The notes under the pieces are model-generated. The model did not search any database. It saw only the letters and a program-made list of their open reading frames with translations, and was not told where the DNA came from. Below, piece by piece: positions 1,125-22,501 of a stretch of DNA of 64,000 nucleotides (its first letter is position 1; each line of letters begins with the position of its first letter). Origin of the DNA: Macrostomum lignano (Eukaryota); NCBI GenBank assembly GCA_002269645.1, contig NIVC01001810.1, positions 170,752 through 234,751 on the forward strand, read 5' to 3'. A program made the position numbers and the translations under genes.

Positions 1125-4100
1125 ATGCTCGGAATAAACGTCACGAACAAGACCTCCCTGATGGTGAGTCATCAGTGGGACTGGATCCTTATTGATAATA
1201 AACAATATTTTCGATTAACAAAGGTCAGCGATTAACAAAAAAGGTAATTTGAGAAAAGCTGCTCAACATGAATGCCCACTGCATTCATAAGGCGACTCTG
1301 ATGGTGAGGCAGATTCGCTTAACCTCACTCAGCTCTTATTGATTTCCACGGTCCAGTTGCAAGTTAGCTGCAAGTTAAGCAGAGCCGGCTGTGGTTAGTA
1401 CGCAGATGAACAGGCTTGCGTCAGGCAGCTGAGCTCCAGTTCAGGCTCGCATTTCTATTCCATAATCCCATTTGGTTGCTATGCTGGTTACTGTGCTGCC
1501 ACCTCACCGACAGAGGTACCTGGGCCTGCCGCAGCCCGAGGACAAGGTGCAGTGCATGTACATCTGGATTGACAGCACCGGGGAGAACCTGCGGGCCAAG
1601 ACTCGAACTGTTGAAACCGTGCCGAAAGATCCCAAAGGTGAGCAGTTGAGACTGAGTTGATGAGGCACTCAGGGCTAAAGTACAAAGCTCTTAATGCTTA
1701 GCGCGCTTTTTCAGGTGGCATCGGGCGCTCGGGACTCAGTGAGTTCTCTGATTTCTGTGTCATTGATGAGGCTGAGAGACTGGGGATTGGGAAAGCTGTG
1801 AGTTCTCTGATTTCTGTGTCATTGATGAGGCTGAGAGACTGGGGATTGGGAAAGCTGTGAGTTCTCTGATTTCTGTGTCATTGATGAGGCTGGGAGACTG
1901 GGGATTGGGAAAGCTGTGAGTTCTCTGATTTCTGTGCCATTGATGAGGCTGAGAGACTGGGGATGGGGGCAGTGAGTAGAGTGGGGATGGGCAGTGAGTA
2001 GAGTGGGGATGGGGCAGTGAGTAGAGTGGGGATGGGCAGTGAGTAGACTGGGGATGGGCAGTGAGTAGAGTGGGGATGGGGCAGTGAGTAGAGTGGGGAT
2101 GGGCAGTAAGTAGACTGGGGATGGGCAGTGAGTAGACTGGGGATGGGCAGTGAGTAGAGTGGGGATGGGGCAGTGAGTAGAGTGGAGAAATGATGAGGCA
2201 AAGTCAGAAGCAGGAAGCCAAGAGCTGAGGGAGTCAGCAGTGCAGAAAGCCAGCCACTCCTGCCAGCCCACAGAAATTGGGTGCCCCCACAAGCCAAGCT
2301 GCAGGCTGAGCCGGCCTGAGCAGCGGCTCACAGAGGCTGCATCGATCTGTAACAGCTCACCTGGCAGAGGCTGTGAGAATTCAGAGAGCCTTGCCGCCGG
2401 GCTCCTCTGAATGAATTGTGCAGGACCCGTCTCCCCCCACCGCCCTGCCGTCAGGCAGCTCAGCTTGCAGCTCAATGCACTTCAAAGACAGGCGAACTCA
2501 GAGACTGAGATGCTGTTCCATTCTTACCTTTTGAATTTCTCAGCTGCCTTTGCATTCCACCCAGTGGATTGTGTTTCACACCCAAATTTTCCCTTTCAGC
2601 CTTTCAGCTTGTATTTGCACTTTTGTTGCTAGGATACCAGTGAGACTCAACGGGTGATGTGTGGAAAATGATTCAAAACATGATACTACGATACTACTAT
2701 GAGAAAAGTAGTATACTGGGTAATTTAAGTAGGCCAGCCGACTTGCCTGCCAAAAATCATAAGAACAATTAGTAATATGAGAATATTATACATTTAGTAT
2801 AGGTGGACTAGCGCACAGCCCCCCCCTTAGGGGTTCATAAAGTAATATATAATATTTTCTGCACCTTGTTACAGACTGAAAATGATGCTAAATATGTGTA
2901 GACATACATCAACTTCCCAAATTATCCCATGAGTGCACTCGCACCTAAATCCACTCCCCGAGCTCCCGCAGACCTGCCCATCTGGAACTTCGATGGCTCC
3001 AGCACGGGCCAGGCGGAGGGCCAGAACTCTGACGTCATGCTGCACCCCGTGGCGCTGTTCAACGACCCGTTCCGCGGCGGCTCCAACAAGCTGGTGCTGT
3101 GCGAGACCTGCGGCCACGACGGCGAGCCGCTGCCCAGCAACAAGCGGCGCACCTGCCAGCAGGTGATGGAGCAGGCCAAGGAGTTCAAGCCCTGGTTCGG
3201 CATCGAGCAGGAGTACACCATGCTGGACACCGACGGGCACCCGTTCGGCTGGCCCAAGAACGGCTTTCCCGGGCCGCAGGGTCCCTACTACACCGGGGTC
3301 GGGGCCCGCAATGTCTACGGCAGGGACGTGGTGGAGTCTCACTACCGGGCCTGCATGTACGCTGGGGTGAAGATTGCCGGCACCAATGCTGAGGTCATGC
3401 CGGCTCAGTGGGAGTTTCAGGTGAGCTGCTGTGGCATTTTGCTTGATTTTCTGACATTCTGCTTGATTGTCTAACATTCTGCTTGATTGTCTGACACCCT
3501 GCTTGATTGTCTAACATTCTGCTTGATTGTCTAACACCCTGCTTGATTGTCTGACACCCTGCTTGATTGTCTGACACCCTGCTTGATTGTCTGACACCCT
3601 GCTTGATTGTCTAACATTCTACTTGATTGTCTAACATTCTGCTTGATTGTCTAACATTCTGCTTGATTGTCTAACATTCTGCTTGATTGTCTGACACCCT
3701 GCTTGATTGTCTGACACCCTGCTTGATTGTCTAACATTCTACTTGATTGTCTAACATTCTGCTTGATTGTCTGACATTCTGCTTGATTGTCTAACATTCT
3801 GCTTGATTGTCTAACATTCTGCTTGATTGTCTAACATTCTGCTTGATTGTCTAACATTCTGCTTGATTGTCTAACATTCTGCTTGATTGTCTGACATTCT
3901 GCTTGATTGTCTAACATTCTACTTGATTGTCTAACATTCTGCTTGATTGTCTGACATTCTGCTTGATTGTCTAACATTCTACTTGATTGTCTAACATTCT
4001 GCTTGATTGTCTGACAACCTGCTTGATTGTCTGACAACCTGCTTGATTGTCTGACATTCTGCTTGATTGTCTAACATTCTACTTGATTGTCTAACATTCT

Positions 4101-5856
4101 GCTTGATTGTCTGACATTCTGCTTGATTGTCTAACATTCTACTTGATTGTCTAACATTCTGCTTGATTGTCTGACAACCTGCTTGATTGTCTGACAACCT
4201 GCTTGATTGTCTGACATTCTGCTTGATTGTCTGACACCCTGCTTGATTGTCTGACACCTTGCTTGATTGTCTGACACCCTCCTGGTCCCTGAAACTCATT
4301 GGCGATTTCCAGTTAGAGTGAACTGCAAGAGAAATGAAAATCCCTTCTGCCCTACTCAAACAGTGGCGGGCAGTAGTTCGTACCGCACACTCACACAGAC
4401 AGCCGACCCAAACCCCGCCGCCAGGTCGGTCCCTGCGAAGGCATCGACATGGGCGACCACCTATGGCTCGGCCGCTTCCTGCTGCACCGGGTCGCCGAGG
4501 ACTTCGGCGTCGCCGTCTCCTTCGACCCGAAGCCGATGCCGGGCGACTGGAACGGCGCCGGGGCGCACACGAACTTCAGCACGCTGCAGATGCGCCAGCC
4601 CGAGGGCATGAAGGCCATCATCGAGGGCATCGAGAGGCTCGGCAAGCGGCACGCCGCCCACATCCGCGCCTACGACCCGCACGGAGGCGCCGACAACAAG
4701 AGGCGGCTCACGGGGCTGCACGAGACCTCCAGCATCGACGACTTCAGCTACGGTGTGGGATCGGGATCTGGGATCGGGATCTGGGATCGGGATCTGGGAT
4801 CGGGATCTGGGATCGGGATCTGGGATCGGGATCTGGGATCGGGATCTGGGATCGGGATCTGGGATCGGGATCTGGGATCGGGATCTGGGATCGGGATCTG
4901 GGATCGGGATCTGGGATCGGGATCTGGGATCGGGATCTGGGATCGGGATCTGGGATCGGGATCTGGGATCGGGATCTGGGATCGGGATCTGGGATCGGGA
5001 TCTGGGATCGGGATCTGGGATCGGGATCTGGGATCGGGATCTGGGATCGGGATCTGGGATCGGGATCTGGGATCGGGATCTGGGATCGGGATCTGGGATC
5101 GGGATCTGGGATCGGGATCTGGGATCGGGATCTGGGATCGGGATCTGGGATCGGGATCTGGGATCGGGATCTGGGATCGGGATCTGGGATCGGGATCTGG
5201 GATCGGGATCTGGGATCGGGATCTGGGATCGGGATCTGGGATCGGGATCTGGGATCGGGATCTGGGATCGGGATCTGGGATCGGGATCTGGGATCGGGAT
5301 CTGGGATCGGGATCTGGGATCGGGATCTGGGATCGGGATCTGGGATCGGGATCTGGGATCGGGATCTGGGATCGGGATCTGGGATCGGGATCTGGGATCG
5401 GGATCTGGGATCGGGATCTGGGATCGGGATCTGGGATCGGGATCTGGGATCGGGATCTGGGATCGGGATCTGGGATCGGGATCTGGGATCGGGATCTGGG
5501 ATCGGGATCTGGGATCGGGATCTGGGATCGGGATCTGGGATCGGGATCTGGGATCGGGATCTGGGATCGGGATCTGGGATCGGGATCTGGGATCGGGATC
5601 TGGGATCGGGATCTGGGATCGGGATCGGGATCTGGGATCGGGATCTGGGATCGGGATCTGGGATCGGGATCTGGGATCTAAAATCCTCAAAACCCCCGCA
5701 GGCGTGGCGCACCGCGGCTGCTCCATCCGCATCCCGCGGCAGTGCAGCGATGACGGCTGCGGCTACCTGGAGGACCGGCGGCCGGCCTCCAACTGCGACC
5801 CCTACTGCGTCACCGAGATGCTGGTGCGCACCGTCTGCCTGAACGAGTCCGGCTGA
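1125..5856 (+). CDS. GLUL: Glutamine synthetase, type II (eukaryotic), 5 coding exons, about 363-364 aa
   Basis: Exons: 1125-1163 or 1268-1303 (alternatives), 1514-1637, 2972-3420, 4425-4752, 5702-5856. All introns are GT-AG with matching phases (0,1,0,1). Motifs: [84 protein letters not shown]. Confidence 0.97.
1739..2185. repeat. GS intron 2: 59-bp repeat (about 4 copies) then a 22-23-bp GGGCAGTGAGTAGAGTGGGGAT minisatellite
   Basis: Direct tandem copies visible in the sequence. Confidence 0.9.
3441..4280. repeat. 20-bp minisatellite GCTTGATTGTCT(A/G)ACA(TT/CC)CT filling GS intron 3
   Basis: About 40 tandem copies with period 20. Confidence 0.97.
4756..5679. repeat. 13-bp minisatellite GGGATCGGGATCT filling GS intron 4
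   Basis: About 70 near-perfect copies; explains the 13-aa-period ORFs in all frames. Confidence 0.98.
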
Positions 5857-6056
5857 CACGCCAGGGACAACAGAGCTGTCTTGCGGACAAAAGTGAACAG
5901 AAAAAATTCTCGTCTTATAAAACTGAGCACAATTCACTCAATGTAGATCCGAGCTTGCAGAACTTTGCACTTTCCCTGTCAATCTACGCCCGTATGAGCA
6001 ATCAATCGATCAGGTTCGGTTGATTCAACTGAAATCAGTTGATATCAAGATACTTT

Positions 6057-6062
6057 AATAAA
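6057..6062 (+). terminator. Candidate polyadenylation signal AATAAA of GS
   Basis: AATAAA about 200 nt after the GS stop and just before the CTAA array. Confidence 0.5.
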
Positions 6063-6090
6063 TACACCGCACTTAATAGAACTATCTAGC

Positions 6091-8275
<2,185 letters not shown>

Positions 8276-8849
8276 ATGTAACTAACTTTCCCACCGATAC
8301 ACTTGATGCTGAAGTCGTAGGCCATCAGCCTGTCTGCTCTGTGCCCGGTGCCGGGGCTGCCAGAGCCGCGGGGGTTGCCAGAGCTGGGGTGGCTGCTCGC
8401 ACAGACAGGCAGGCGGGTGGCCTTCAATCTCTCTCTGCAGTCTCTCACAGTGCCTGCGAACTTCTGTTTTGCATCACGCCACCTGAGTGCATCGCCCCAC
8501 CTCTCTGCTCGAGCCCTCCGAGTCTCCGAGCCCAGACCGCAGCCCCAGAACAATGGGGCTCTCCGGCCCCCTCACCGTCCCCGCCCTGCGCCTGTCAAAG
8601 CCAGCGGCGGCTCTGAGGTGGGCGGCAGTTTGAGTCTCAACTGTTGCCATGGTGACCGGGCAGATGGGGCAGGTGAGGCTTTACTAATTGCTGCCTCAGG
8701 TGAGGCTGGGCTGGGGAGGGCAGCTGCGCTTTTATGCCTGTTTTGTTATTCTCAGCTGCTGCGACCTGCCTGCTCAGAAAGTGCAAAGTAAAGAGTTGGA
8801 CTGCTTTGTGGCATCAGCCTGCTTGTGCTGCCTCCCTGTGCTGCCTCCC

Positions 8850-9170
8850 TCTGCTGTCTCCCTCTGCTGTCTCCCTCTGCTGTCTCCCTCTGGTGTCTCC
8901 CTCTGCTGTCTCCCTCTGGTGTCTCCCTCTGCTGTCTCCCTCTGCTGTCTCCCTCTGCTGTCTCCCTCTGCTGTCTCCCTCTGCTGTCTCCCTCTGCTGT
9001 CTCCCTCTGCTGTCTCCCTCTGCTGTCTCCCTCTGCTGTCTCCCTCTGCTGTCTCGCTCTGGTGTCTCTCTCTGCTGTCTCCCTCTGCTGTCTCCCTTTG
9101 CTCCCTCTGGTGTCTCCCTTTGCTGTCTCCCTGTGGTGTCTCCCTCTGCTGTCTCCCTCTGCTGTCTCCC
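8850..9170. repeat. 13-bp CT-rich minisatellite CTCCCTCTGCTGT
   Basis: Degenerate tandem copies. Confidence 0.9.
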
Positions 9171-9859
9171 ATTCTCTCATTGCCAATCCCTGTACACTGT
9201 CAAATTTCAAATTAGGAGACAGACCGAGAGAGAACTCAAACGGACAGAAAGAAGGGTTAAAAGGGAGGGACAGAACAAAAGCGATACGCACGGCTTCCAT
9301 GCTTGAGTTGGGCTGCATTTGAAAGCATCGGCAGCCCCTGCGACTGAGCCCTGGCCAGGTGAGAATTTTCCTTATAGTTGCCTCTGCAGCAGCCAGCGAC
9401 AAAAGATGCTCAGCCCTTCACCCCGCACCGAATCTCTGAGCACAGCCGCACCCTCTGCTCTCAAGCCGCAATTGTCTCTCCGAGCTCTGCACCACCTCCC
9501 TAGACCCGAACTTGTTTTCATTTCTTTTATAATATATACGAGTGGAACTCCTCCTTCGGAGAAAAATGGGGAAGAACTCCCATCGCCAGAATTTCATTCC
9601 CTGAAATCCATCATCTGAAATTCCATGACTTGAATCCCATCTTCCAAATCATCTCCAAATCCTCTACAAAGCCATTTAAATGTCATATCTTGTTTTTACT
9701 GTTTGAAAAAACTGACTGCAATTGTCTAGACTCAGATTCGCCTGTCTTTTCTCTCCTCTTTGCTCCCTCATCTCTACTGTATAATTTATCATCTCTCATC
9801 TTTCCTATCTGCACTCCTCTCTTACACTCTTCTTTCCCTCGCTATCTCCTCTGAATTCT

Positions 9860-9912
9860 TTTATCTCTAATCTTTAATCTCTCTTCTCTCTCCTCTCTCC
9901 TTTCTCCTCTCG

Positions 9913-9951
<39 letters not shown>

Positions 9952-10230
9952 ATCTCTACTCCCTTACTTATTTCTTCTCCCTCATCTATTGTCTCTACTC
10001 TCTCCTGTCTCCTCTCTCTCCTCTTCTCTTCTCTCTTCTCTCTCCTCTCATCTCTCCTGTCTCATCTCTGCTATCGCATATCTCCCCTCTCCTCTTCTCT
10101 CTTCATTTCCGCCTCGCTCCCCTCTTCTCTCCCAGCTGTCATCTCTCTAATCTCTTCTCTCTCATATCTACTCTCTTTTCTATCATCTCTCCTCTCTTCT
10201 CTTTTGACTCTTCTCTCTAATCTCTCATTT
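9860..10230. repeat. CT-rich low-complexity tract
   Basis: Polypyrimidine run including (CT)n. Confidence 0.85.
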
Positions 10231-11111
10231 AACTGACTGAAGGTGCCCGATAATAAAACCAATTGAAATTTGTCACCAGCCTCCTCCATTACTGAAATTA
10301 CTGAAATGATAGCTTAAATGTACTTAAACTGATTTCTATTAAAATATCCTCCTCCGTTAAACGACTATCTAATTATATCAGTATCGATATGATACCATTT
10401 CCGTCAATCAAGACTGTTTAATTGAAATCTATAAAAAGATGCTTTCTACTTTCAAAGTAACGGGTATGATAGTCTGTGGGAAAAAGCGTGGTAGACAGAC
10501 ATCCACTGGAGAGGCAGAGGGGCCAAGGAAGGTTATTGAAGGTTAAAAAACAGTTTTCTGCTTTTTATGCTTTTTCTGTGCGAAATTAAAATAGCCTAAA
10601 GCCTGATCCGGAAAATTTGCAGTTTTGCCATATAAGTTTCGACGCTGGCTTGCCAGAATTGTAGGATTTCTGCACATAGGTAGGTTAACAGCAAGTAGTC
10701 ACTGATGGCAGCTGTGTGTGAGCTCAGTGCCATAGACATGTCTGAGTCACCACAGTAATTTGATTTTATAAAGTAGCTCTGGAGAACAAAATGAGGAAAG
10801 CCAAGTCTCGCAGCAAGACGCTCGGCTAGAAGTTCTAAAATGTACGGGTATAACCACAGAATACTATTGTATTCAAGGGGTATAACACTCGCGTAATAAT
10901 CATTTACCAAATCTATGACTCCAGACACATTGTGCCACATAAAAGGGGTCACAGTTATGAGGAAGAGTCGGGTGAACATCAAGTAGTCACCATCGACTGA
11001 CAAGCACCAAAAAAGTGACACATGAGCATCAAATTTAATATATGACAGGCTTTGCTCAGATGCTGCAGCACGATTTTCAACGAGAACCCAAGCTGAACAG
11101 CTGAAAACTCT

Positions 11112-11996
11112 CTATGAGCTCTTCTGAGCTTTGCTCGGATCAAAGGAGACCTGCCGAGCGAGCTGTGACACGGTCTGAGCAACGCAATAGTACTTTATAA
11201 TTTCGGCCCTCTCGTTTCTGAACTCGTACGGCTTCTCCGTCATGTGCCGCTTCACGCGCATCATGATGCCCTCCAGGTGCTTCTCTGTGTAAAATCGCTC
11301 GATGTAGTGGCACAGGGTCTGCACGAAGACGCTACCAGTCTGAGGGTCGCGGTAGGACACCTGACCCTCTGTGGTAGGGAAGCAGAACAGGAAGTCACTC
11401 TCTGGAGGGTACAGGGCCGGGTTCTGCGCGAACTCTGGGGGCAGCTGGTCGACTGCCAGCCCCCTGTGCGTCACTTCGTCTTTGCCTCTGCCGCGGCAGG
11501 CCTGGACAAAGAAGATCTTCGGCTTGCCCGCCAGGTCGGGGCAGACGGAGGCCTGGAGGAGGGTTGGGAAATGTGTAGAAATTTGTAGAGCTGCAATGCT
11601 TTGCATCATATGCACAGATGAGCCAGACCCAGACCCACCTTGAACTTGGCTGCGAGCTCCAGAACCGGACTCAGCACTCCATGGCCATGGATAATGCAGT
11701 CCCTTCCCTGTGGGTCCTTGCGGCCGTGGGCCATCAGGAAGCAGACAAAACTGCCGTGCTTGGCGAGCTCCTTGGACTTCTTTGTCTCATTGAGGAAGTC
11801 ATCGATCTCTGCAGTTGTGGGATTTTGCTTCTCCATGATGGTGAAACTCAGCTTCCTGAAAAGCTTCCTCACTCGCTCCACATCCCGCTCCGAGCCTTTG
11901 CGCTCCTCTTCGCCGCTGCCGGCTGAGTACGCGTTGATGTTGATGATGAGGCAGAATCCCTGCGGGTTCGTCACCTGGTAGAAATCCTCGTGGAGT
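11112..11996 (-). CDS. Caspase catalytic domain (p20+p10), two exons
   Basis: Exons 11996-11639 and 11552-11112, separated by an 86-nt GT-AG phase-0 intron. Motifs: PQGFCLIININ, RKGSERD, FLMAHG (catalytic His), KPKIFFVQACRG (catalytic Cys), SDFLFCF, SYRDPQTGSVFVQ. The upstream acceptor TTCCAG at 11998-11997 is phase 2. Confidence 0.95.
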
Positions 11997-12342
11997 CTGG
12001 AATGCAGCAGGGTGATCGGGACGTGAGGCAAATAATATAGAACAGGAATCCCTGGAGACCTTTGCCTGATTCTGTTTTGCATGAGAAGCCTTTGGAATGC
12101 CGTGGAATGCTGTGGCACACTAAATATTATATATAATCTCTTCGATACAAAACTTATATTGAACATGTGAAATCTTTAAACAAATAAGGCTAGCTTTATG
12201 ACACAGACGCATGCACAGCTCAGTTGGTGGCGTAATATAGAATACACAGACACATTTGTGCTCATTTTAGAGTACTTCTGTCTCTGACTCATGCCAATCT
12301 GTCACTGACTCATGCCAATCTTTCATTCCTGCTCACTGACCC

Positions 12343-12383
12343 AGTCCCAGCTGGAGAAGGCGGGGTCCAGAGACGGCCTCGCA
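12343..12383 (-). pseudogene. 41-bp vestige of the kinase exon found in paralogs B and C
   Basis: Acceptor TTTCAG followed by TGCGAGGCCGTCTCTGGACCCCGCCTTCTCCAGCTGGGACT, identical to 48544 onward. Homology then stops and an in-frame TGA follows within a few codons. Confidence 0.85.
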
Positions 12384-12538
12384 CTGAAAGAGGAGAGGGT
12401 TGGGAGACTGAAGCAATGCAGGATGGCTGCAGAAATGGGGAACTGAGCAGGCAGGGAGAGTCTGTCAGCTGATCATTGTGAGCCACTCTTAGCTGAACCG
12501 AATGCAATTTCCCAAGTGAAAAGTGGAAGACGGCCTGC

Positions 12539-13890
12539 CTTGCTGACGGAGTCTCCTCGGACTGCAGCTGCAAGCCCGACATCGCCTGGCCCAGCCTCCG
12601 CTCTTCTCCATCAGGCTGGTGCCGCCGCTGCTCTGCGATCCACTCCCGAATCCGAGCTCCGTGCTGAGAGTTCCGCTCTGCGTAGTCGGCCACCGACTCG
12701 CCACCGGAATCGAGAAGGTCGAATGGGGCGAAGCCGAGAGAGTCCGCGATGAGGCGGAGCGAGTCCAGGTCGTGATACTGAGCAGCCAGGTGAGCAGGTG
12801 TGGCTCCGTTTGAGTCTTTTTCCAACAGACAGGCCGCCGGACCGAGCTCAGAGATGAGCCACTCGAGACAGGAGTTGGTCTCATTCATAGCAGCAAAGTG
12901 AATGGCAGTGCGTTGGACTAGGCCAGGCTGATGGAAGCAGTCGGATCCGAGGACTGATTTGAAGAACTGCATGGAATCGGCGCCCTGAAACTCAGCAGCG
13001 AGATGGACGGGAGTGTTTCCTTGTTGGTCTCGAACGGAGAGACAGTCGGTTCCGCACTCGTTTACCAGCCACTTGAGACAGGAGTTAGTGGCTTCATTCA
13101 TAGCCGCACAGTGAATGGCAGTGCGTTGGACTTGGCCAGGCTGATGAAAGCAGTCGGATCCGAGGACTGATTTGAAGAACTGCATTGAATCGGCGCCCTG
13201 CTTCCAAGCAGCGATATGGACGGGAGTGCTTCCTCGTTGGTCTCGAACGGAGAGACAGTCGGTTCCGCACTCGTTCACCAGCCACTTGAGACAGGAGTTA
13301 GTAGCTTCATTTAAAGCGGCTTTGTGAATGGCAGTTTGTTGTAATAAGCCAGGCTGATGGAAGCAGTCGGATCCGAGGACTGATTTGAAGAACTGCATGG
13401 AATCGGCGCCCTGCTTCCAAGCAGCGAGATGGACGGGAGTGTTTCCTTGTTGGTCTCGAACGGAGAGACAGTCGGTTCCGCACTCGTTCACCAGCCACTT
13501 AAGACAGGAGTTAGTAGCTTCATTCTCAGCGGCCCAGTGAATGGCAGTGCGTTGGAGTCGGCCAGGCTGACGGAAGCAGTCGGATCCGAGGCTGCGGTGA
13601 ATGAGCTCCATCCATGACTCATCTCGACACAAGGCAGCCAGGTGCACAGGAGTGTTGCCTCTTTCGTTGGTGCAGGTGAGGCAGTCGGGTCCGAGTTTCT
13701 TAATAAGAGCCTCGAAGCAGCGGAGACCGTCGGATAGATAGGTCACGTGATGAGCAATGGACCGCTTCAACTGGTTGATGTTGAGTGCGAAGTTGGTGTC
13801 GAGCTGCCGGCAGAGGGGGAGCAGGCGGCCTGCGTCCTTGGCACGGAGGGCTGCAGCGACTTCTTCGCGCACTGAGGCTTGCCGGGCCAT
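12539..13890 (-). CDS. Ankyrin-repeat exon A (about 450 aa), predicted to splice to a downstream effector exon, probably the caspase
   Basis: Open frame with repeated TPVHLAA and TAIHxAA ankyrin motifs in 71-aa di-repeat units. Ends at a phase-2 AAG|GCAGGC donor shared with paralog C. Confidence 0.9.
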
Positions 13891-13939
13891 GTCTGCAGAG
13901 TGGCGCGGACTGCGAGCGCGCTGGGCTGCTCTGTGCCGC

Positions 13940-13946
13940 TTTTATA
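13940..13946 (-). promoter_or_regulatory. TATA box of ANK gene A
   Basis: TATAAAA about 50 nt upstream of the ATG at 13890. It is preceded by a CCGCCC GC-box and followed about 30 nt later by an Inr-like CGCAGT. Confidence 0.6.
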
Positions 13947-14087
13947 TGGGCGGTGCGGAGAGGCGGGCTGAGCGGCATCCGAGCCAGACTACTGTGAGTA
14001 GGCAAAGCAGAGTAAACTGCAGATGCTGTGCTGAGTCTGTCAGTTCTGAGCTCGGAACTCAGCGAGACCGACTGCTGGCCGCAGGTG

Positions 14088-14466
14088 CGCGACACGGGAA
14101 GGTGAGCGACACGGGAAGGTGAGCGACACGGGAAGGTGAGCGACACGGGAAGGTGAGCGACACGGGAAGGTGAGCGACACGGGAAGGTGAGCGACACGGG
14201 AAGGTGAGCGACACGGGAAGGTGAGCGACACGGGAAGGTGAGCGACACGGGAAGGTGAGCGACACGGGAAGGTGAGCGACACGGGAAGGTGAGCGACACG
14301 GGAAGGTGAGCGACACGGGAAGGTGAGCGACACGGGAAGGTGAGCGACACGGGAAGGTGAGCGACACGGGAAGGTGAGCGACACGGGAAGGTGAGCGACA
14401 CGGGAAGGGTGAGCGACACGGGAAGGTGAGCGACACGGGAAGGGTGAGCGACACGGGAAGGTGAGC
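14088..14466. repeat. 17-bp minisatellite GACACGGGAAGGTGAGC
   Basis: About 22 copies; each contains AAG|GTGAG on the + strand. Confidence 0.97.
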
Positions 14467-14980
14467 CCTGCATAAAGGGAAGGGCGAAACTAAGATTGGG
14501 GTACCGGAGAATGGGGACAAATTGGAGAACAAAATGAGCACAAGATATATATCCAGCGCTTCGAATACTGACTCGAACTCAATCCAGCACCTGAATACTC
14601 GAATGTGCAGATCACATGCAGCAGCTGCTCAGCATCAGTGAGCACTGTTGCACAGGAACTCATGACAGCCGATCAGAGGCCCCTGACGTCACCATGAGCG
14701 CCGTCATTGCAGAGCAGCATCAGTGAGCAAGTGAGCACAGCGCAACTCACAGAGGAATATTTTACAATTGATTGCAGCTCATAAATCAGACAAGCTGAAG
14801 TCGACACTCAGAGCGCAGCCTTCTCAGCAACTGCTTGAGCACCTTTGTTTTGCATCAGCCAGCAGGTGGACAGTGGCTTGGAGTGGAGCCACCGACTTTG
14901 AGCACTCTGCTTGCTGAGTAATGTTCATTAATGTACTGATGTGCTTAGTGCTGTACTTTTGCAATAAACCGTTATGTTTT

Positions 14981-15209
14981 AGAGTGCTCCATCACCGGTA
15001 CAAAGTGCTCCATCACCGGTACAGAGTGCTCCATCACCGGTATAGAGTGCTCCATCACCGGTACAGAGTGCTCCATCACCGGTACAGAGTGCTCCATCAC
15101 CGGTACAGAGTGCTCCATCACCGGTACAGAGTGCTCCATCACCGGTACAGAGTGCTCCATCACCGGTACAGAGTGCTCCATCACCGGTACAGAGTGCTCC
15201 ATCACCGGT
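14981..15209. repeat. 21-bp minisatellite AGAGTGCTCCATCACCGGTAC
   Basis: About 11 tandem copies. Confidence 0.97.
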
Positions 15210-15631
15210 GCTCAATAATTAACAAAACACGCAATTCCGTGACTTCAGTTTCTGCAGAAGCAGCAACGATGCTCTCCAGACTCTGTCGAGTCCAGCAAAT
15301 TTCTTCAAAGTGCAGAATCCTCAGAGCCTCATCAAATATATTTAGTCATCAGGCAGGGCGGCAGGGAGGCGTCAAGCGCTCAGGAAGCTGGCAGTTCTGG
15401 CACCAGACTCTGCTCAGAGCTGCTCATAGATCTGCACTCAGCGGGCTGGCTGAGGCCTCGCAGCTCTGATGGGATTTGAGAAGCTGCTGGAGTTGAGCAC
15501 TGCGGGACCTGAGCGACTGGAGCAGGGAGGGACTCAAGCTGATGAGGCTGTGCGAGCGACTCTAAATGCAATGCTCTGGGAGACTGGGGAGAGGGAGAAG
15601 AAGGGATGGAGAAGAGAAGATAGGTAGAATG

Positions 15632-16318
15632 GAGATGCAGCAGTGGGAGATGCAGTGTGCGGGCACAGCATGGGTGCAGCAGTGGGGAGATGCAGTGTGC
15701 GGGCACAGCACGGGTGCAGCAGTGGGAGATGCAGTGTGCGGGCACAGCATGGGTGCAGCAGTGGGAGATGCAGTGTGCGGGCACAGCAGGGGTGCAGCAG
15801 TGGGGAGATGCAGTGTGCGGGCACAGCACGGGTGCAGCAGTGGGAGATGCAGTGTGCGGGCACAGCACGGGTGCAGCAGTGGGAGATGCAGTGTGCGGGC
15901 ACAGCACGGGTGCAGCAGTGGGGAGATGCAGTGTGCGGGCACAGCACGGGTGCAGCAGTGGGAGATGCAGTGTGCGGGCACAGCACGGGTGCTGCAGTGG
16001 GAGATGCAGTGTGCGGGCACAGCACGGGTGCAGCAGTGGGAGATGCAGTGTGCGGGCACGGCACGGGTGCAGCACTGGGAGATGCAGTGTGCGGGCACAG
16101 CAGGGGTGCAGCAGTGGGGAGATGCAGTGTGCGGGCACAGCACGGGTGCAGCAGTGGGAGATGCAGTGTGCGGGCACAGCACGGGTGCAGCAGTGGGAGA
16201 TGCAGTGTGCGGGCACAGCACGGGTGCAGCAGTGGGGAGATGCACTGTGCGGGCACAGCACGGGTGCAGCAGTGGGGAGATGCAGTGTGCGGGCACAGCA
16301 GGGGTGCAGCAGTGGGAG
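15632..16318. repeat. 39-40-bp minisatellite GGGAGATGCAGTGTGCGGGCACAGCACGGGTGCAGCAGT
   Basis: About 17 tandem copies. Confidence 0.97.
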
Positions 16319-16996
16319 GCGGCGGGTTCGCACCTGACAGACTCAATAAAAATTCAATTAACGCACAATGAGCAGCGAATGTACATCAGTGTAAATTACA
16401 GATCAGTCTGGGAAAGGATTGCTAGCCCAGCTCCCTACTCTATTGGGATAAATCCTCAGCTTAAATCCCAAAGCATCCCAAAGCTCAGGGTCAGACTAGC
16501 AATCCACTCCCCGACCCCGCTGGGCCCAGCAGCTCACAGCGGGTGCACACAGCAATTTCAGCTTGCGGATTCGGCAGGGACAACAAAGAGTCACAACAAA
16601 GAGCTGATGGGGACAAGCGGCAGGTGCAGGGGATCACAGAGAGCGGTGCACAGGCGGTGCCAAGCAGTGCATTCTGAAGTGCAGGAGGACTTCAGCGAAT
16701 TGCCAGGTGCAGAAATTTGCACACAGAAATATTTTTTACAGTGCGAGCTGAGCGAATTCAGCAAAGCTGGGCAGAGGGCGCGGCAGCCGCGGCTCTGCGG
16801 CATCTCCGTGTGAGCCGCCCCGGATCTGCCGCTCCTTGGCTAGACTAGCAATCCACTCTGTTTGTGGAATCCAGCAAACCAGGCCCGGGAGCGCCAAGGT
16901 CAAGTCAGTAAAAGTACATCCTGTCACATCCAGGGCATTGCTGATTGACAATTCAGTCCAGCTGCATGGGGCCCGGGCTCGAGCCCCGCACCTCCC

Positions 16997-18019
16997 CTAG
17001 GAGGCCAGCGGCAGCTGCAGCAGGCTGCCGTCCCGTGGCGAGAAGCCGGCGTTGTGGCGCTGCAGGAACAGGTGCACCTCCCGGAACCGCGGCCTGCAGG
17101 CTTCGTCCCGCTGCCAGCACTCGCTCATCAGGTCGAAGAGCTCGCGGGGGCACCGCGGGGGGCGGGGCAGCCAGTCAGACAAACACCGAGCAGCAGCCGC
17201 TCACCTGCTGGTCGGTGAGGTGAGCAAACGGCTGCTCCCTGCAGAAGGTGAGCATCTCCCAGAGCGTCACAGCGAAGCTCCAGACGTCGCTGCGGCAGGA
17301 GAAGCGGCCGTGCAGGACGGCCTCCCAGGCCATCCAGCGGATCGGCAGCGAGGCGCCGCGACCTCCGTCCAGCCTGCAGTAGTCAGCGGAGTAGAGAGGC
17401 TGAGACATGCCAAAGTCGCAGATCTTCACCTGGTAGTCTTCACCCAGCAGGCAGTTGCGGCAGGCCAGGTCTCGGTGCACCAGCTGCAGGGACTCCAGGT
17501 ACTTCATGCCGCTGGCAATCTGAGCTGCCAGGTAGATGAGGCAGCCGTGAGACAGCGGCGGCTCAGCTGATGCTGCAGCGGCTGCTCTGGAGCGCAGGAA
17601 CTGGTGCAGGTCCCCATGCTGCATGAACTCCACCAGGATGCACTGCTGCGCCGCTGCGTCCTTGGTTGCCACGCCCAGCACCCTGACGATGTTCGGGTCC
17701 TGCAGGCGCGCCAACAGCCGCATCTCGCGCCGGAAGTCGCGGCGCGCCTGCGGCCCCGCGCCAGGCCGGAGAGTCTTGGCCGCCACCAGCAGCAGCCGGC
17801 CGCCAGGAGCGGCCCACTCGGCCAGGCGGACCTCGCCGAACTGGCCGGCGCCAAGGCGCTCTTTCAGCGCCACGGAGCCCGGCGCCACCTCGAGAGCGGC
17901 GACCGCGTCGGAGTCGGCGCCGCCGTCCAGATCGTCAGGGACTCCAGCGACACCGCCGCAGTCCATGGCGGAGGCGAGGTCCGCGTCCGGACAGCCGTAG
18001 ACTGTGTTGCCCGAGCAGC
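16997..18019 (-). CDS. Discoidin-domain-receptor-like tyrosine kinase domain; one lesion near 17171-17204; no upstream exons identified
   Basis: Juxtamembrane GNTVY, then LGAGQFGEV, VAAKTL, DPNIVRVLG, HRDLACRN, KICDFGMS, LPIRWMAWE, SDVWSFAVTLWE and CPRELFDLMSECW. Acceptor CCGCAG at 18021-18020 is phase 1. Confidence 0.8.
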
Positions 18020-18729
18020 CTGCGGATTAGGGGAGTAGGGGAATGGATTTAGAGGGGATTATTGGCATTTGGAAGGCCAGCTGCAGCTGATGATGGGGAA
18101 TATGGCGCTCGCTCAGATTTCGGGAAACTCGGACACCAGCAGCTCAGAAATCAGGTGCTCCATCAGCTCAGGACTTGGAGCCTGCCTTCGCTGCTGCCGC
18201 TCGCTCACGCCTCAGGAGTTCAGCGCAGACTGACAGCTCGAAGAAGCTGAGCTGGCTGCATCATCTCAGAGGTGCCGGTGAGGCAAAGTCATCGAGAGGC
18301 TGGCCAAGTGGCCTCATCAGCGGCTGCCCCATCAGTGACGGACCGGCCTGCGGTTACGCAATGAGCTCTGCTCCCCAGCAGAATTCCCTCCTCTCTGCTG
18401 TCTGCCTCACCGGCAGGAAGTGGCTGAGCTGCCTCATCTCTCTCCCAGCCTCTCAGCTGCTCAGTTGATCACTTTCCACTTGATGCGGCTGAGAAGCTGG
18501 GACAAAGAGCTGCTCGCGTGGCTGATAAGTGTTTGATGCTGGGGGCTTCATCAGTGGGGATCTGAGCAGGAATGCGGACTGAGAAGACTCAGGTGTCACC
18601 TGATGGCACTGATAGAGCTCAGTGGGAAATATGAAATGTTGAGGCATTTCGGTAATCCCCAAATCCTCATCACAGGTGAGTCAGGCCACCTGTTGATGTG
18701 CATGCCGTGAGCCTATGAACATGCTGACG

Positions 18730-20820
18730 TTGCAAACGACTTTCTGCCACAGGCGGCACTGGTCTCTTGGAATCGAAAATTGCTAGAAGCGGTTTGTGGC
18801 CAGTGACCAGGATGAAATTTCGACCCAACAGGTACTTATGGAACTTCTTAAGTCCAAATATAATTACCAATGCTTCATTTTCAATTTGGGCATAGTTATT
18901 TTCAGCAGCTGACAGTGTTCTAGAAGCGTAGGCGATTGGCCTGTCTCCGGTCTTTGTTTCATGAGAAATGACCGCACCAAGACCGTAAGGTGAAGCGTCA
19001 TATTCTAGCTTCAGATTCTTGGACAGATCATAGTGAGTCAGCACCTTGCTTGAAGTAAGTTGATCTTTGACTTGCCTGAACGCGGATTCGAACCGGCTGG
19101 CCAGTCGAAATCCTTTTCTTTTCGAAGTCGCAAGTAAAAGGGGTGCATCAGAGTTGCCAGATTCTGGATGAATTTTCCATAATAATTTATCAGTCCAATC
19201 GAAGCCCTTAGCTCGGACACATTTCGTGGGCGTGGAGCCTCATGGATAGCTCTGATCTTGTCCTCAGTTGGGTGAATTCCCTTTTCATCCATCCTGTATC
19301 CAAGGAAAGTGACAGATGTCTGCTCGAATTTACACTTCGACTTCTTTAGTCTGACACCTCGCTCTCGAAAGCGTTGCAAAACCTTCTTCAGATTTTGCAA
19401 GTGTTCCTCGGAATTCTTGCCAACTACTAAAACATCGTCAATGAAGCAGATGACTCCGCTCAGTCCTTGCAGCATCTTGGCCAACTACTAAAACATCGTC
19501 AATGAAGCAGATGACTCCGCTCAGTCCTTGCAAAATCTTGTCCATGGCCATCTGGAAAACTACCGGTCCACTGGCTAGTCCGTATTGCAGCCGCTGGCAC
19601 TGAAACAATCCCTTGTGCGTATTGAGCACAATGTACTGTTTGGAGTCTTCGTCCAATTATAGCTGCAGAAATGCTTGAGTAGCGTCCAACTTAGTGATAT
19701 ACTTGCCTCCATTTAGAGCACTAAACAGATCTTCCTGCCTGGGCAATGGGTACTGGTCGACAATCAGAACCTTGTTCAGTGTCGTCTTGAAATCCGCAAA
19801 TTGTCACTGATCAAAGCGAACAGGCTTTTTGGTTATCAAAATTTCTACGAAGTAAGCAGGGTTACCTCTGTCAAATACCCGATTAATGCTTGGTGGTGAT
19901 ACTCTGGCTTCTTGGCCACACGGTTCATTCGCGAAGTACTCCGTAACCTGCTTGTTGCGAAATCCTTTCAGAGCCACGGTAGACTTACATGCAACTCCCA
20001 GGTGTCCTTCTTTTCCACACTTGTTGCACTTTTTATTACGATGTGGGCAAGCATTTGCCAAGTGATCTGGGCCAGAGCAACGGTAGCACCTGCGAGTAAA
20101 TGTAGGCTTCTCCTTGTTTCCTTCCCTGATTTGGCGGGTCTCAGTAGCGCGTCGAAAAGCTGGCTTCCGCTTCTGGAGCTGGTCGCTTCGAGTGCCAACT
20201 CTGTTCACTGCTGGAGCAGATCCTTGGATGCTGCGAGCGTTCTTGAATGCATTCTCAATGACCTGAGCCTCCTCAACTGTGACATTGAATGTCGAGTCGT
20301 CTTTTAGAGTGGTCAACAGTTTGTTCAACATATGCTCGTCTCTGAGGCCGAAGTCAAAAGCATCGCGGAGCGCTTGATCCAGGAATGCGTCAAACTTGCA
20401 GCTGGCACTGAGGCTTCGAAGACTTACAACGAAGTCGGCTATGGTCTCGCCATCCTTCTGCTTCCTTTGAGCGAATACGAATCGTTGAGCAATAGAGCTC
20501 AATTCCGGTGTAAACTGGTGCCGGAGTGCAGTCAGTAGCTCCTCGCTGGCGCAATTGCGTTCCTCAGAATTGAGTAGGCCTCTTCTCTGATCAGGGTCAG
20601 CAGGTTCGCCTTTTCTCAGCTTCATCAGTGACTTTCTTGGCCACATGAAAATACTCCAGCCGCTCCTCGTACTCCTCCCAGTTCCGAGGGTTGCTGCAGT
20701 TGAATGGTTCGATAACCGGCCTCGTCGCCATTGTTGTGTTTGTATCGTATTTCCTAAAAGCCGTTTTTTATAAAAGCAAGCACGCAGGCTCGAAGCCTAA
20801 GGAACGCAGCTTTCACAACA
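18730..20820 (-). mobile_element. Degenerate Ty3/gypsy (Mag-like) LTR retrotransposon, internally deleted and 3'-truncated
   Basis: 89-bp LTR TGTTGTG...CACAACA at 20732-20820. PBS TGGCGACGAGG (complementary to tRNA-Ser GCU) at 20730-20720. Gag with two CCHC knuckles at 19804-20646, RT (FIDD) and RNase H (DASPYGLGAV, YAQIENEAL). Most of the protease and all of the integrase are missing. Confidence 0.9.
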
Positions 20821-21029
20821 GGCTCATGGCTGCTGCCAGTGTCATGCTGTTTCTGGAACAATCGATCAGCAGTGTCTGTCCAACTGAAGTCGGAGGTCGC
20901 GAACTGCTGCAGAGGCGCCTCTGGCAGGTGAAGAATTTATTATTATTTGCAGTTCTTTGCTCTCTGTTAAACAAAAGTACAAAGCCAGAAGCAGTACCGA
21001 AATGCTCGCATCTCACTGCAATGAGCACC

Positions 21030-21110
21030 ACAGAGCCCGGCGTCACCTCGAGAGCGGCGACCGCGCCAGAGTCCGCGCCATCCAGTCTGACTTTCGAGCG
21101 CCATCTGTCT
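21030..21110 (-). pseudogene. Short relic copy of the DDR-like exon's pre-kinase segment
   Basis: LDGADSGAVAALEVTPGSV here versus LDGGADSDAVAALEVAPGSV at about 17930-17870; the DNA similarity is visible. Confidence 0.7.
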
Positions 21111-21344
21111 GCAGGCGTCACCGCAGGCGCCGGAATTTCTCAGGAATTTCTCAGTCAGCCCATAGACAGCAATAATTTGGTAAACAAAATTCCGCAGTTG
21201 CTATGGAGACAACATGATTTTGTGAATCGGAAATTTTGATGCTTTTGAATCTGTATAAAATATTCTCCATTTATTTATTCCAAAAAATCAGGGTAATTAT
21301 AAGAAAGACTTTAAATTTTGTTTAGCACAAAATGAAATTATAAA

Positions 21345-21718
21345 TATTGCATTCAGGGGATAAATATTGCATTCAGGGGATAAATATTGCATTCAGGGGA
21401 TAAATATTGCATTCAGGGGATAAATATTGCATTCAGGGGATAAATATTGCATTCAGGGGATAAATATTGCATTCTGGGGATAAATATTGCATTCAGGGGA
21501 TAAATATTGCATTCAGGGGATAAATATTGCATTCAGGGGATAATTATTGCAATCAGGGGATAAATATTGCATTCAGGGGATAAATATTGCATTCAGGGGA
21601 TAAATATTGCATTCCGGGGATAAATATTGCATTCAGGGGATAAATATTGCATTCCGGGGATAAATATTGCATTCAGGGGATAAATATTGCATTCCGGGGA
21701 TAAATATTGCAATCAGGG
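21345..21718. repeat. 20-bp minisatellite ATAAATATTGCATTCAGGGG
   Basis: About 18 tandem copies. Confidence 0.97.
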
Positions 21719-22261
21719 AATAGTAAACTTTCGCACACACCATCAGTGATTCAAATTCGCTCATTGCTACTTGTCAGTAGTTGATCTCTCACATCTGGCC
21801 ATCACAAGCAGTCCCTCAGGTGCATAAAAAGTAACTCAGCGTGTCAGCTGTGAAAGCTCCAATTAAAACGCCTTTCTGTCGATAAGAGCTGCAAGAATGC
21901 CTGCAGGGCATGCAGAGCCAGCAGCTGAGCCACAGGGGGCTCACAGATAAGGCCGCCTGTTCACCGCAGCTGAGCCTACTGGAGGCATTCTAGCGGTGAA
22001 ATGCTTGGCGTACTGTTCTGCTCTGACAAAATCAGCAGTGCATTTTATCTAATCATTATTTTGGTGCCATGGCTCAGTGACTTGGCACAGATTTTTCATT
22101 TTAGCACTTTTATATCAGCTCACAGCGAATTTGATTTGGCCTCGAAGTATGCTTAACGGGAGAATATGTTTATGTCTTTGAGGGAGATGATTTCCACTGT
22201 TGACAGTTCTCAGAGAGACAGCGGAACAACAGCAATAAAATCACAGCTTCTGATTGACCAT

Positions 22262-22501
22262 CTGTCACTGACTCATCCCAATCTGTCACTGACTCATGCT
22301 AATCTGTCACTGACTCATGCCAATCTGTCACTGACTCATGCCAATCTGTCACTGACTCATGCCAATCTGTCACTGACTCATGCCAATCTGTCACTGACTC
22401 ATGCCAATCTGTCACTGACTCAGGCCAGTCTGTCACTGAGTCATGCCAGTCTGTCACTGACTCATGCCAGTCTGTCACTGACTCATGCCAGTCTGTCACT
22501 G
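22262..22501. repeat. 21-bp minisatellite CTGTCACTGACTCATGCCAAT starting at the stop codon of kinase B
   Basis: About 11 copies, each with TGACTCA. The same unit occurs at 12283-12320 and 46456-47112. Confidence 0.95.

What the first reader, a model, noticed from the sequence alone, without database searches (positions are those of the whole stretch)
12283..12383. Footprint of a clean kinase-domain deletion in paralog A
Seen: A retains the same intron and acceptor as C and the first 41 nt of the kinase exon. After about 22 nt of filler it jumps to the 21-bp repeat that follows the kinase stop codon in B and C. Inference: A was an ANK-kinase that lost the whole kinase, leaving the downstream caspase exon as the next in-frame acceptor. 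This would be a snapshot of effector replacement.
Basis: partly seen in the sequence, partly recalled or inferred. Interest (0 to 1): 0.75.

Follow-up and report, generated by a model that had tools for sequence, protein, structure and literature searches.

The report
Kinase-deletion scar in ankyrin–caspase gene
Inside an intron of a flatworm (Macrostomum lignano) gene lies the leftover stump of a deleted kinase domain, showing that an ankyrin-repeat kinase gene was recently rebuilt into an ankyrin-repeat caspase gene; a neat but not unprecedented example of domain swapping.

Summary
The window is Macrostomum lignano contig NIVC01001810.1. On the minus strand, paralog A keeps the kinase-type intron, its acceptor and exactly 41 nt of kinase exon 1 (12383..12343). 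A 23-nt filler (12342..12320) and two copies of the 21-bp repeat (12319..12278) follow; this repeat starts the 3'UTR of intact ANK-kinase paralogs.

A sister contig of the same assembly (NIVC01000934.1) has the same flanks: glutamine synthetase on one side, and the ANK exon, intron and 41 nt at 97.5% identity on the other. There it carries an intact 812-aa ANK-kinase gene with 20 repeat units, so A lacks about 1.76 kb.

In A the scar lies inside a 542-nt GC-AG intron of the annotated, transcript-derived gene BOX15_Mlig013715g1 (PAA63849.1). That gene splices the ANK exon in frame to two intact caspase-3/7-like exons.

Refinement: the caspase exons are not native neighbours. They belong to a ~3-kb block copied from the ANK-caspase paralog family, which already exists as tandem genes elsewhere. 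The event therefore swapped an effector between two existing architectures.

Unresolved: one step or two, and whether the chimera is under selection (dN/dS ~0.95). It is a new member of a known kind (exon-shuffling chimera). Interest is moderate.

The parts
12539..13908 (-). ANK-repeat exon of gene A (BOX15_Mlig013715g1). The ATG is at 13890. The exon contains 70-aa ANK-pair repeats and a kinase-type C-terminal linker ending ...QLQSEETPSA, followed by the donor AAG|GCAGGC (GC donor, phase 2).
   Evidence: Pfam finds Ank families. The exon set reproduces PAA63849.1. The last 518 nt through the stump are 97.5% identical to the L004 ANK-kinase gene.
11997..12538 (-). Intron 1 of the annotated ANK-caspase mRNA (542 nt, GC-AG). 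It contains the whole scar.
12384..12538 (-). Kinase-type intron with its intact acceptor. The polypyrimidine tract is 18/20 pyrimidines and ends TTTCAG|.
   Evidence: Alignments with C, B and L003; pyrimidine count.
12343..12383 (-). 41-nt stump of kinase exon 1. If the acceptor is used it encodes ..[13 protein letters not shown].
   Evidence: Homology to C, L003 and L004 ends exactly at 12343.
12320..12342 (-). 23-nt filler at the deletion junction. It contains an in-frame TGA and possible donors TGG|GTCAGT and TCA|GTGAGC, and partly resembles a degenerate repeat unit.
   Evidence: No homolog was found in the window or in the loci held at that point, L001-L003.
12278..12319 (-). The last two 21-bp units of the 3'UTR repeat array. 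The final unit is a variant at the same position as the final unit in L004.
12164..12277 (-). Sequence downstream of the array, homologous to the post-array flank of the sister copies L004 and L006 but only about 70% identical. It overlaps the start of the caspase-type intron homology in an AT-rich stretch of about 25 nt (12164-12188).
11997..12188 (-). The 3' 192 nt of the ANK-caspase-type intron, with acceptor CATTCCAG| (phase 2).
   Evidence: 82% identical to L001/L002 introns. Homology starts at the same point in four canonical genes.
11639..11996 (-). Caspase exon 1 (p20 part, containing the catalytic His in FLMAHG).
   Evidence: Pfam Peptidase_C14; caspase-7 alignment.
11112..11552 (-). 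Caspase exon 2 (QACRG catalytic Cys, p10 part, stop codon). Intron 2 (11553-11638) is 100% identical to L001/L002.
9200..11111 (-). Remainder of the ~3-kb ANK-caspase-derived block: 3'UTR and downstream flank. The GS-side junction lies at about 9171-9213. Beyond it the sequence is again collinear with L004 and L006.
47109..48544 (-). Comparator: the intact kinase of paralog C. Exon 1 is 48544..48154; an intron filled with ~49/98-bp tandem repeats follows; exon 2 is 47570..47109 including the TGA stop.
   Evidence: The kinase is STE20-like.
46455..47105 (-). Comparator: the 31-unit 21-bp array after C's stop codon.
22260..23826 (-). Comparator: paralog B kinase cassette, comprising about 90 nt of intron, two kinase exons and 11 repeat units.

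Best explanation
The feature is an intronic scar in a young chimeric gene of Macrostomum lignano. The ancestor of gene A was an ANK-repeat / STE20-like kinase gene lying next to glutamine synthetase, as it still does in a sister copy of this region. In the window's copy, about 1.76 kb was lost: the rest of kinase exon 1, the repeat-filled kinase intron, kinase exon 2 and all but the last two 21-bp 3'UTR units. A non-homologous junction with a 23-nt filler remains.

Just downstream, a ~3-kb block replaces about 380 nt of the native flank. It was copied from an ANK-caspase paralog and runs from the middle of that paralog's intron through both caspase exons, the 3'UTR and downstream flank.

The kinase-type and caspase-type introns interrupt the reading frame in the same phase (2). 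The ANK exon's donor can therefore splice over the scar to the caspase acceptor. This yields an in-frame 722-aa ANK-caspase with an intact catalytic dyad, which is what the transcript-based GenBank annotation records.

The scar itself has no coding role. At most it acts as a decoy 3' splice site, which would give a truncated ANK-only product.

Shown: the anatomy, the undeleted sister copy, the paralog origin of the caspase block, frame compatibility, and the match to the annotated protein. Inferred: the order and number of rearrangement steps, end-joining as the repair route, and that the product is functional.
For: The scar anatomy and its statistical support come. The window is 100% identical to NIVC01001810.1. 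The sister contig L004 has GS, then a flank collinear at 95-97% in the long flank alignments, then an intact ANK-kinase. Its homology to A runs at 97.5% up to exactly the 41st nt and resumes at the last two array units. A third copy, L006, shares L004's flank and carries a 24-unit array. All other ANK-kinase units (B, C, L003) have the kinase, which polarises the deletion as derived. The caspase block is about 91% identical to four canonical ANK-caspase genes, starts at the same intron position in all four, and none of them has 21-bp units. The exon model equals PAA63849.1. The annotation was built from RNA-seq and de novo transcripts, and BLAT placements of the de novo transcripts were kept only within 1% of the best hit. 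The caspase keeps His, QACRG and the S1 arginines.
Against: dN/dS between A's caspase and the canonical copies is about 0.95 (6 synonymous and 21 non-synonymous differences), so there is no evidence of purifying selection on the chimera. The retained kinase acceptor has a stronger pyrimidine tract (18/20) than the caspase acceptor (14/20) and could divert splicing to a premature stop. I did not see the RNA-seq junction reads themselves. The array end and flank are only about 70-83% identical to L004 while the neighbouring sequence is about 97%. A simple in-place deletion does not explain this; it hints that the whole block 9200-12342 arrived from a diverged donor locus. With three copies and no outgroup, the polarity of the caspase block (gain here or loss in the sisters) is not formally proven.
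Confidence: 0.8

Rival explanations
1. Single-step block replacement. The kinase was not deleted on its own. One rearrangement (template switching or ectopic repair) replaced everything from kinase exon nt 42 to the GS-side flank. The copied donor locus already joined an array end, a diverged flank and a caspase cassette.
For: The whole segment ~9200-12342 is foreign or strongly diverged relative to L004/L006, whereas both sides are 95-97.5% identical. The array-end flank is about 70% identical, too diverged to be orthologous. The flank/caspase-intron junction sits in AT-rich microhomology. A published M. lignano caspase with a kinase pro-domain hints that kinase and caspase modules are adjacent elsewhere.
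Against: No donor locus with this arrangement was found in the eight loci examined. The last array unit is a variant at the same position in A and L004, and the flank starts identically with AAGTACTCTAA, which favours orthology of that end. The kinase-exon junction is non-homologous in either case.
Confidence: 0.3
2. The chimera is a decaying by-product of post-polyploid gene loss. The ANK-caspase transcript is low-level noise, and the locus is effectively a pseudogene or an ANK-only gene terminated in the scar.
For: dN/dS is about 0.95. The neighbouring paralogs in this copy are also damaged: B is cut off from its ANK exon and unannotated, and C lacks its 5' end. A strong decoy acceptor is retained.
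Against: All three exons are open. The catalytic and S1-pocket residues are intact. A transcript-derived CDS spans the junction. No ANK-only or unspliced product is on record. With only 27 substitutions, dN/dS has little power, and values near 1 are common in fast-evolving families.
Confidence: 0.3
3. A was always an ANK-caspase gene, and the kinase-type intron, stump and repeats were pasted in by gene conversion from an ANK-kinase paralog.
For: Gene conversion is active in this family: the 70-aa ANK repeats are nearly identical between kinase and caspase genes, and caspase intron 2 is 100% identical while flanking non-coding sequence is 82%.
Against: Synteny argues against it. The orthologous position in L004 and L006 holds the ANK-kinase 3' end with the same post-array flank next to GS. 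Conversion would not create a non-homologous junction with filler. A's entire ANK exon and upstream spacer match ANK-kinase units.
Confidence: 0.05
4. Assembly artefact: collapse or a chimeric join removed the kinase.
For: The region is repeat-rich and belongs to a multi-copy family in a redundant PacBio assembly.
Against: The junction has no shared sequence that could cause a collapse, and it carries a unique 23-nt filler. The intact and deleted versions are assembled as separate contigs differing by 1-3% in their flanks. The annotated mRNA joins the kinase-type linker directly to the caspase exon. A's exact caspase sequence also occurs in the independent ML2 assembly's protein set (A0A1I8IJR4).
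Confidence: 0.03

Closest known systems
TRIM5-CypA (TRIMCyp) fusions of owl monkeys and macaques (recalled from my own knowledge, not tested here)
   Same: A new C-terminal module lands in or after an existing gene. The original C-terminal domain is then bypassed or lost, so the same N-terminal scaffold is spliced in frame to a different module.
   Different: CypA arrived by LINE-mediated retroposition of an intronless cDNA. Here the caspase block is genomic DNA that keeps its own intron and starts mid-intron, so it is not a retrocopy. The old domain was also physically deleted rather than only skipped.
Classical exon-shuffling and chimeric new genes (e.g. Drosophila jingwei, Sdic; phase-compatible intron recombination)
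   Same: Two identifiable parent genes, breakpoints in introns or flanks, symmetric intron phase (2/2) that allows in-frame joining, and origin within tandem or duplicated gene families.
   Different: Both parents belong to one superfamily sharing the same ANK exon, so the result recreates an architecture (ANK-caspase) that already exists. The pre-event state survives in a sister copy of a neopolyploid genome.
Platyhelminth 'ANK caspases' (Lee et al. 2014; Genome Biol Evol 2024, PMC11463336)
   Same: An ankyrin-repeat pro-domain followed by a caspase p20/p10 domain, in a flatworm.
   Different: That paper describes ANK caspases as restricted to parasitic flatworms and lists only a kinase-pro-domain caspase for M. 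lignano. Here a free-living species has at least six annotated ANK-caspase genes, whose catalytic domain is closest to caspase-3/7. Orthology to the parasite clade was not tested.
ANK + kinase proteins such as ILK and TNNI3K (ANK N-terminal to the kinase)
   Same: The parent family has N-terminal ankyrin repeats followed by one protein kinase domain.
   Different: The kinase here is STE20-like (best matches STK10/SLK/MST3, E about 1e-37), not TKL. The ANK part is made of lineage-specific 70-aa double repeats. This is a large species-specific expansion.

Membership tests
Chimeric gene formed by exon shuffling / deletion fusion | Two identifiable parental sequences contribute the 5' and 3' parts | tested here: met
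   The 5' part is 97.5% identical to the L004 ANK-kinase gene. The 3' part is about 91% identical to canonical ANK-caspase genes L001, L002, L007 and L008.
Chimeric gene formed by exon shuffling / deletion fusion | Definable breakpoints, with the ancestral arrangement preserved elsewhere | tested here: met
   The breakpoints lie at 12343/12342, at about 12164-12188 and at about 9171-9213. The intact ANK-kinase sits at the syntenic position in NIVC01000934.1.
Chimeric gene formed by exon shuffling / deletion fusion | Phase-compatible introns giving an uninterrupted ORF | tested here: met
   Both acceptors are phase 2, and the spliced CDS gives 722 aa with no internal stop.
Chimeric gene formed by exon shuffling / deletion fusion | The chimeric transcript is actually made | tested here: inconclusive
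   The model equals GenBank PAA63849.1, whose annotation pipeline is RNA-seq and transcript based. The junction reads were not inspected.
Chimeric gene formed by exon shuffling / deletion fusion | Evidence of selection or function of the new gene | tested here: not met
   dN/dS is about 0.95 against canonical copies, based on only 27 substitutions. No functional data exist.
Caspase (peptidase family C14A) | Pfam Peptidase_C14 above the gathering score | tested here: met
   147 bits against a cutoff of 21.4 for P0267.
Caspase (peptidase family C14A) | Catalytic His and Cys (QACRG) and S1-pocket Arg residues | tested here: met
   AHG, QACRG, eRkG and sYRd align with caspase-7.
Platyhelminth ANK-caspase clade | ANK pro-domain N-terminal to the caspase domain | tested here: met
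Platyhelminth ANK-caspase clade | Phylogenetic placement within the monophyletic ANK-caspase clade (sister to DED caspases) | not tested
   No phylogeny was made. The best structural-sequence matches are executioner caspases 7 and 3, which argues for caution.
Retrocopy-mediated domain capture (TRIMCyp type) | The inserted module is intronless, with a poly(A) tail or target-site duplications | tested here: not met
   The block keeps caspase intron 2 and 192 nt of the upstream intron.
STE20-like protein kinase (the lost domain) | Protein kinase fold with STE-group signatures, present in A | tested here: not met
   Only 41 nt (13 codons, before the Gly loop) remain in A. The full domain is present in B, C, L003 and L004.

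The most novel reading that the evidence does not exclude
The M. lignano ANK family may work as a modular scaffold with exchangeable effector cassettes (STE20-like kinase or caspase). Cassettes would begin inside a phase-2 intron, end in repeat-rich 3' flanks, and be moved repeatedly between loci. Some loci would carry two cassettes in series and choose between them by alternative splicing. Gene A would then be a fixed outcome of a recurrent, possibly selected, diversification mechanism of an innate-immune or cell-death type, rather than a one-off accident.
Probability: 0.15. Interest if true: 0.7.

Novelty: new member of a known kind. Interest (0 to 1): 0.42.

Why it matters
This is a clean, datable example of how a signalling scaffold changes its output domain. 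The 'before' state (ANK-kinase) and the 'after' state (ANK-caspase) coexist in sister copies of a recently polyploid genome, and the breakpoints and splice phases are all readable. It illustrates phase-compatible exon shuffling and gene fate after genome duplication. It also shows that a free-living flatworm has multiple ANK-caspases, which bears on a published claim that this architecture is confined to parasitic flatworms. It does not reveal a new kind of molecular system.

Tried and rejected
1. I first treated the ~89 nt after the two repeat units as sequence of unknown origin, because BLAST found nothing. Inspection and local alignment showed it is a diverged homolog of the post-array flank in L004/L006.

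2. A stand-alone or trans-spliced caspase gene is unlikely. The first in-frame Met within the caspase exon lies after the first beta-strand region, and the ML2 model A0A1I8IJR4 merely starts 21 nt inside the intron.

3. My first donor guess (CC|GTCAGC) was replaced by the GC donor AAG|GCAGGC, which reproduces both PAA63849.1 and the ANK-kinase protein P0098.

4. I tried to polarise the caspase-block indel with a three-copy identity tree. Identities were 97-99.6% and gave no consistent topology.

5. The third copy, L006, could not show its kinase. A transposon-like insertion interrupts the array and the locus ends first.

6. Exact look-ups for an ANK-only isoform or an unspliced ORF found nothing.

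7. No tRNA gene was found in the flank, despite an A-box-like motif.

8. P0274 (1563 aa), a candidate kinase-plus-caspase model, has no caspase domain.

9. The supplementary tables of PMC11463336 are not held, so the accession of the kinase-pro-domain caspase could not be retrieved.

Full report
**What the window is.** Homology searches with the caspase, the whole predicted protein and the neighbouring glutamine synthetase all return Macrostomum lignano proteins. Locus L005, fetched for GenBank protein PAA63849.1, is 100% identical to window 23908..1112. The window is therefore part of contig NIVC01001810.1 of assembly Mlig_3_7, GCA_002269645.1. The genes discussed here lie on the minus strand.

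**Checking the observation.**
- Self-comparison shows A 12343-13465 aligned to C 48504-49637 at 92%, and A 12343-12476 aligned to B 23695-23826. Homology ends sharply at 12343.
- Multiple alignments show that A, B, C and the external ANK-kinase locus L003 share the intron, the acceptor TTTCAG| and the first 41 nt of the kinase exon.
- After that point B, C and L003 continue into the Gly-loop region (..[22 protein letters not shown]). A instead continues with a 23-nt filler and two 21-bp units.
- With up to 3 mismatches the unit occurs 44 times in the window against 0.01 expected. It is found only at A (2 copies), B (11) and C (31), always directly after the kinase stop in B and C.

**Domains and gene model.**
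- Pfam identifies Ank repeats (12313-13941), Peptidase_C14 in two exons (11609-12175 and 11115-11786), and Pkinase in two exons in C.
- The caspase exons are joined by a short GT-AG intron and are intact, with the AHG His and the QACRG Cys.
- The kinase-type and caspase-type acceptors both leave one base to complete a codon (phase 2).
- The exon set 13908..12539, 11996..11639 and 11552..11112 translates exactly to PAA63849.1 (BOX15_Mlig013715g1, 722 aa; junction ..SEETPSAR|LHEDFYQ).
- Its first intron (12538..11997, 542 nt, GC-AG) contains the entire finding.
- The same GC donor is used in the annotated ANK-kinase P0098 (junction SEETPSAS|ARP).
- According to Wudarski et al. 2017 (PMC5730564), the GenBank annotation derives from genome-guided StringTie/TACO assemblies of RNA-seq plus de novo transcripts. 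The de novo transcripts were placed by BLAT and kept only within 1% of the best hit, and ORFs were called by TransDecoder. The model therefore reflects transcripts, although I did not see the reads.
- If the retained kinase acceptor is used instead, the frame ends in the filler (..[19 protein letters not shown]).
- Including the stump as a 43- or 47-nt internal exon would shift the caspase frame; this is my own reading of the sequence.

**The undeleted copy.**
- The glutamine synthetase protein P0147 lies on contig NIVC01000934.1, the same contig as ANK-kinase P0098.
- Locus L004 is collinear with the window from GS through win 5497-9170, at about 95-97% in the long flank alignments and 97-99% in unique blocks.
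- L004 then has about 380 nt of unique sequence, a post-array flank, a 20-unit 21-bp array, an intact two-exon kinase, the kinase-type intron, the ANK exon and A's upstream spacer. This is an annotated 812-aa ANK-kinase gene.
- A and L004 are 97.5% identical over the last 518 nt up to exactly the 41st exon nucleotide.
- Homology resumes at the last two array units. The final unit is a variant at the same position in both copies, and both are followed by AAGTACTCTAA...
- Relative to L004, A lacks 1,756 bp.
- A third copy, L006 (NIVC01000292.1), has the L004-type flank and a 24-unit array that is interrupted by an unrelated, transposon-like sequence.
- All other ANK-kinase units seen (B, C, L003, L004) possess the kinase, so the deletion in A is the derived state.
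- The source paper attributes such redundant blocks of at least 95% identity to the extra large chromosomes of line DV1.

**Where the caspase exons come from.**
- Window 12188..10945 is about 91% identical to the corresponding part of four canonical ANK-caspase genes. These lie in tandem arrays on other contigs: L001 and L007 on NIVC01000874.1, and L002 and L008 on NIVC01003147.1.
- The aligned part runs from 192 nt upstream of the caspase acceptor to about 170 nt beyond the stop. A further collinear piece is 9524..9214.
- The canonical genes have their own ANK C-terminal linker (..SQSEKTPTVP|LHEDFYQ), a canonical CC|GTAAGT phase-2 donor, a ~245-nt intron and no 21-bp units.
- A is therefore a chimera. 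Its 5' part is an ANK-kinase unit and its 3' part is a ~3-kb fragment of an ANK-caspase unit.
- This fragment replaces the ~380 nt found in L004/L006. The window becomes collinear with them again at about 9170.
- The block keeps introns, so it is not a retrocopy.

**What remains unexplained.**
- The 114 nt after the array (12164-12277) match L004/L006 at only about 70%, or 83% when the two units are included. Adjacent sequence on both sides matches at 95-97.5%.
- Within the caspase block, the exons are 96-97% and intron 2 is 100% identical to canonical copies, but the flanking intron and 3'UTR are only 82% identical.
- These patterns suggest gene conversion among paralogs. They also suggest that the whole block ~9200-12342 may have come from a diverged donor locus in which an array end was already joined to a caspase cassette.
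- A 2024 study reports a M. lignano caspase with a kinase pro-domain (PMC11463336), which could be such a locus. I could not retrieve its accession.
- Whether the event was one step or two is therefore open. The three-copy comparison gives no consistent tree with which to polarise the block.

**Function.**
- The caspase is closest to executioner caspases 7 and 3 and keeps the catalytic dyad and the S1 arginines.
- The lost kinase family is STE20-like.
- dN/dS between A's caspase and the canonical copies is about 0.95, from 6 synonymous and 21 non-synonymous changes. There is thus no positive evidence of constraint, though the test has little power.
- The decoy kinase acceptor has a stronger pyrimidine tract (18/20) than the caspase acceptor (14/20).
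- No ANK-only product is on record.
- My estimate: A is expressed as an ANK-caspase, and it is uncertain whether that product is maintained by selection.

**Comparison with known cases.**
- Mechanistically this is phase-compatible exon shuffling that produces a chimeric gene.
- The closest familiar analogy is TRIMCyp, with the same scaffold and a replaced C-terminal module. That case involved retroposition; this one did not.
- The ANK-caspase architecture has been described for parasitic flatworms and stated to be absent from free-living ones. M. lignano nevertheless has at least six annotated ANK-caspase proteins.

**Verdict.** It is a new member of a known kind, of moderate interest.

Noticed in passing
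window 22260-23826 and 23827-29205: Paralog B is only a kinase cassette. Its homology to C, L003 and L004 stops inside the intron at 23826. Upstream lie gag-like, zinc-knuckle-type ORFs and then a divergent ANK exon (27343-29205, only about 66% identical to the A/C ANK). No gene is annotated over the B kinase in L005, so this looks like another cassette/scaffold rearrangement in the same region.
   Followed up: partly
window 48491-49672: Paralog C lacks the N-terminal part of the ANK exon. Its ORF opens in the middle of a repeat at 49672 and there is no counterpart of A 13465-13890. C appears to be 5'-truncated.
   Followed up: partly
window 46335-46361 and 46429-46455: A 27-nt inverted repeat (26/27 complementary, 67-nt loop) lies directly after the last 21-bp unit of C. 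The post-array flanks of A/L004, B/L003 and C are all different, so the array marks the edge of the duplicated unit.
   Followed up: partly
window 12164-12277: The post-array flank of A is about 70% identical to the sister copies, while the surrounding sequence is about 97% identical. This local excess of divergence is unexplained. The plus strand contains a tRNA A-box-like motif (AGCTCAGTTGGTGG), but ARAGORN finds no tRNA.
   Followed up: partly
window 11553-11638 versus 11997-12188 and 10945-11111: Caspase intron 2 is 100% and the exons 96-97% identical to canonical ANK-caspase genes, but the flanking intron and 3'UTR are only 82% identical. This is a likely gene-conversion tract across the caspase exons.
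   Followed up: partly
window ~52600-62000: A Polinton/Maverick-like element: an rve integrase ORF (52645-53679), a protein-primed type B DNA polymerase (55594-57030) and further ORFs with no Pfam match.
   Followed up: partly
window 30699-34463 (+); 39931-40527 (-); 19041-20796 (-): LTR-retrotransposon pieces: RT-RNaseH, integrase zinc-binding and integrase core domains at 32592-34463, another integrase fragment at 39931-40527, and a zinc-knuckle gag-like ORF (19807-20796) with an adjacent reverse-transcriptase-like ORF (by eye, no Pfam run) in the inter-gene spacer.
   Followed up: partly
window 17178-18026 (-): An ORF with a strong tyrosine-kinase domain match (PK_Tyr_Ser-Thr, 218 bits) lies in the spacer between B and A. 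The same spacer is present in L003. No gene is annotated there in L005.
   Followed up: no
window 2900-5850 (+): The glutamine synthetase gene has introns filled with long tandem-repeat arrays (3432-4283 and 4756-5678). The window holds many further arrays (6080-8290, 14083-14466, 15636-16318, 42143-42673, 43425-45800). Array lengths differ between the sister contigs.
   Followed up: no
L006 20495 onward (NIVC01000292.1): In the third copy the 21-bp array is cut within a unit by unrelated sequence beginning TGTAGAG.., probably a transposon insertion. The kinase was not reached within the locus.
   Followed up: no
literature versus loci L001, L002, L005, L007, L008: PMC11463336 states that free-living flatworms lack ANK caspases. 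M. lignano has at least six annotated ANK + Peptidase_C14 proteins: PAA63849.1, PAA53038.1, BOX15_Mlig018347g1, Mlig020959g1, Mlig032136g1 and Mlig006631g1.
   Followed up: partly
L002 ~2800-4045: The canonical ANK-caspase gene in L002 has a 2-nt gap in caspase exon 2 relative to A and L001. Its protein P0097 ends in a frameshifted tail. This is either a pseudogene or a PacBio indel error.
   Followed up: no
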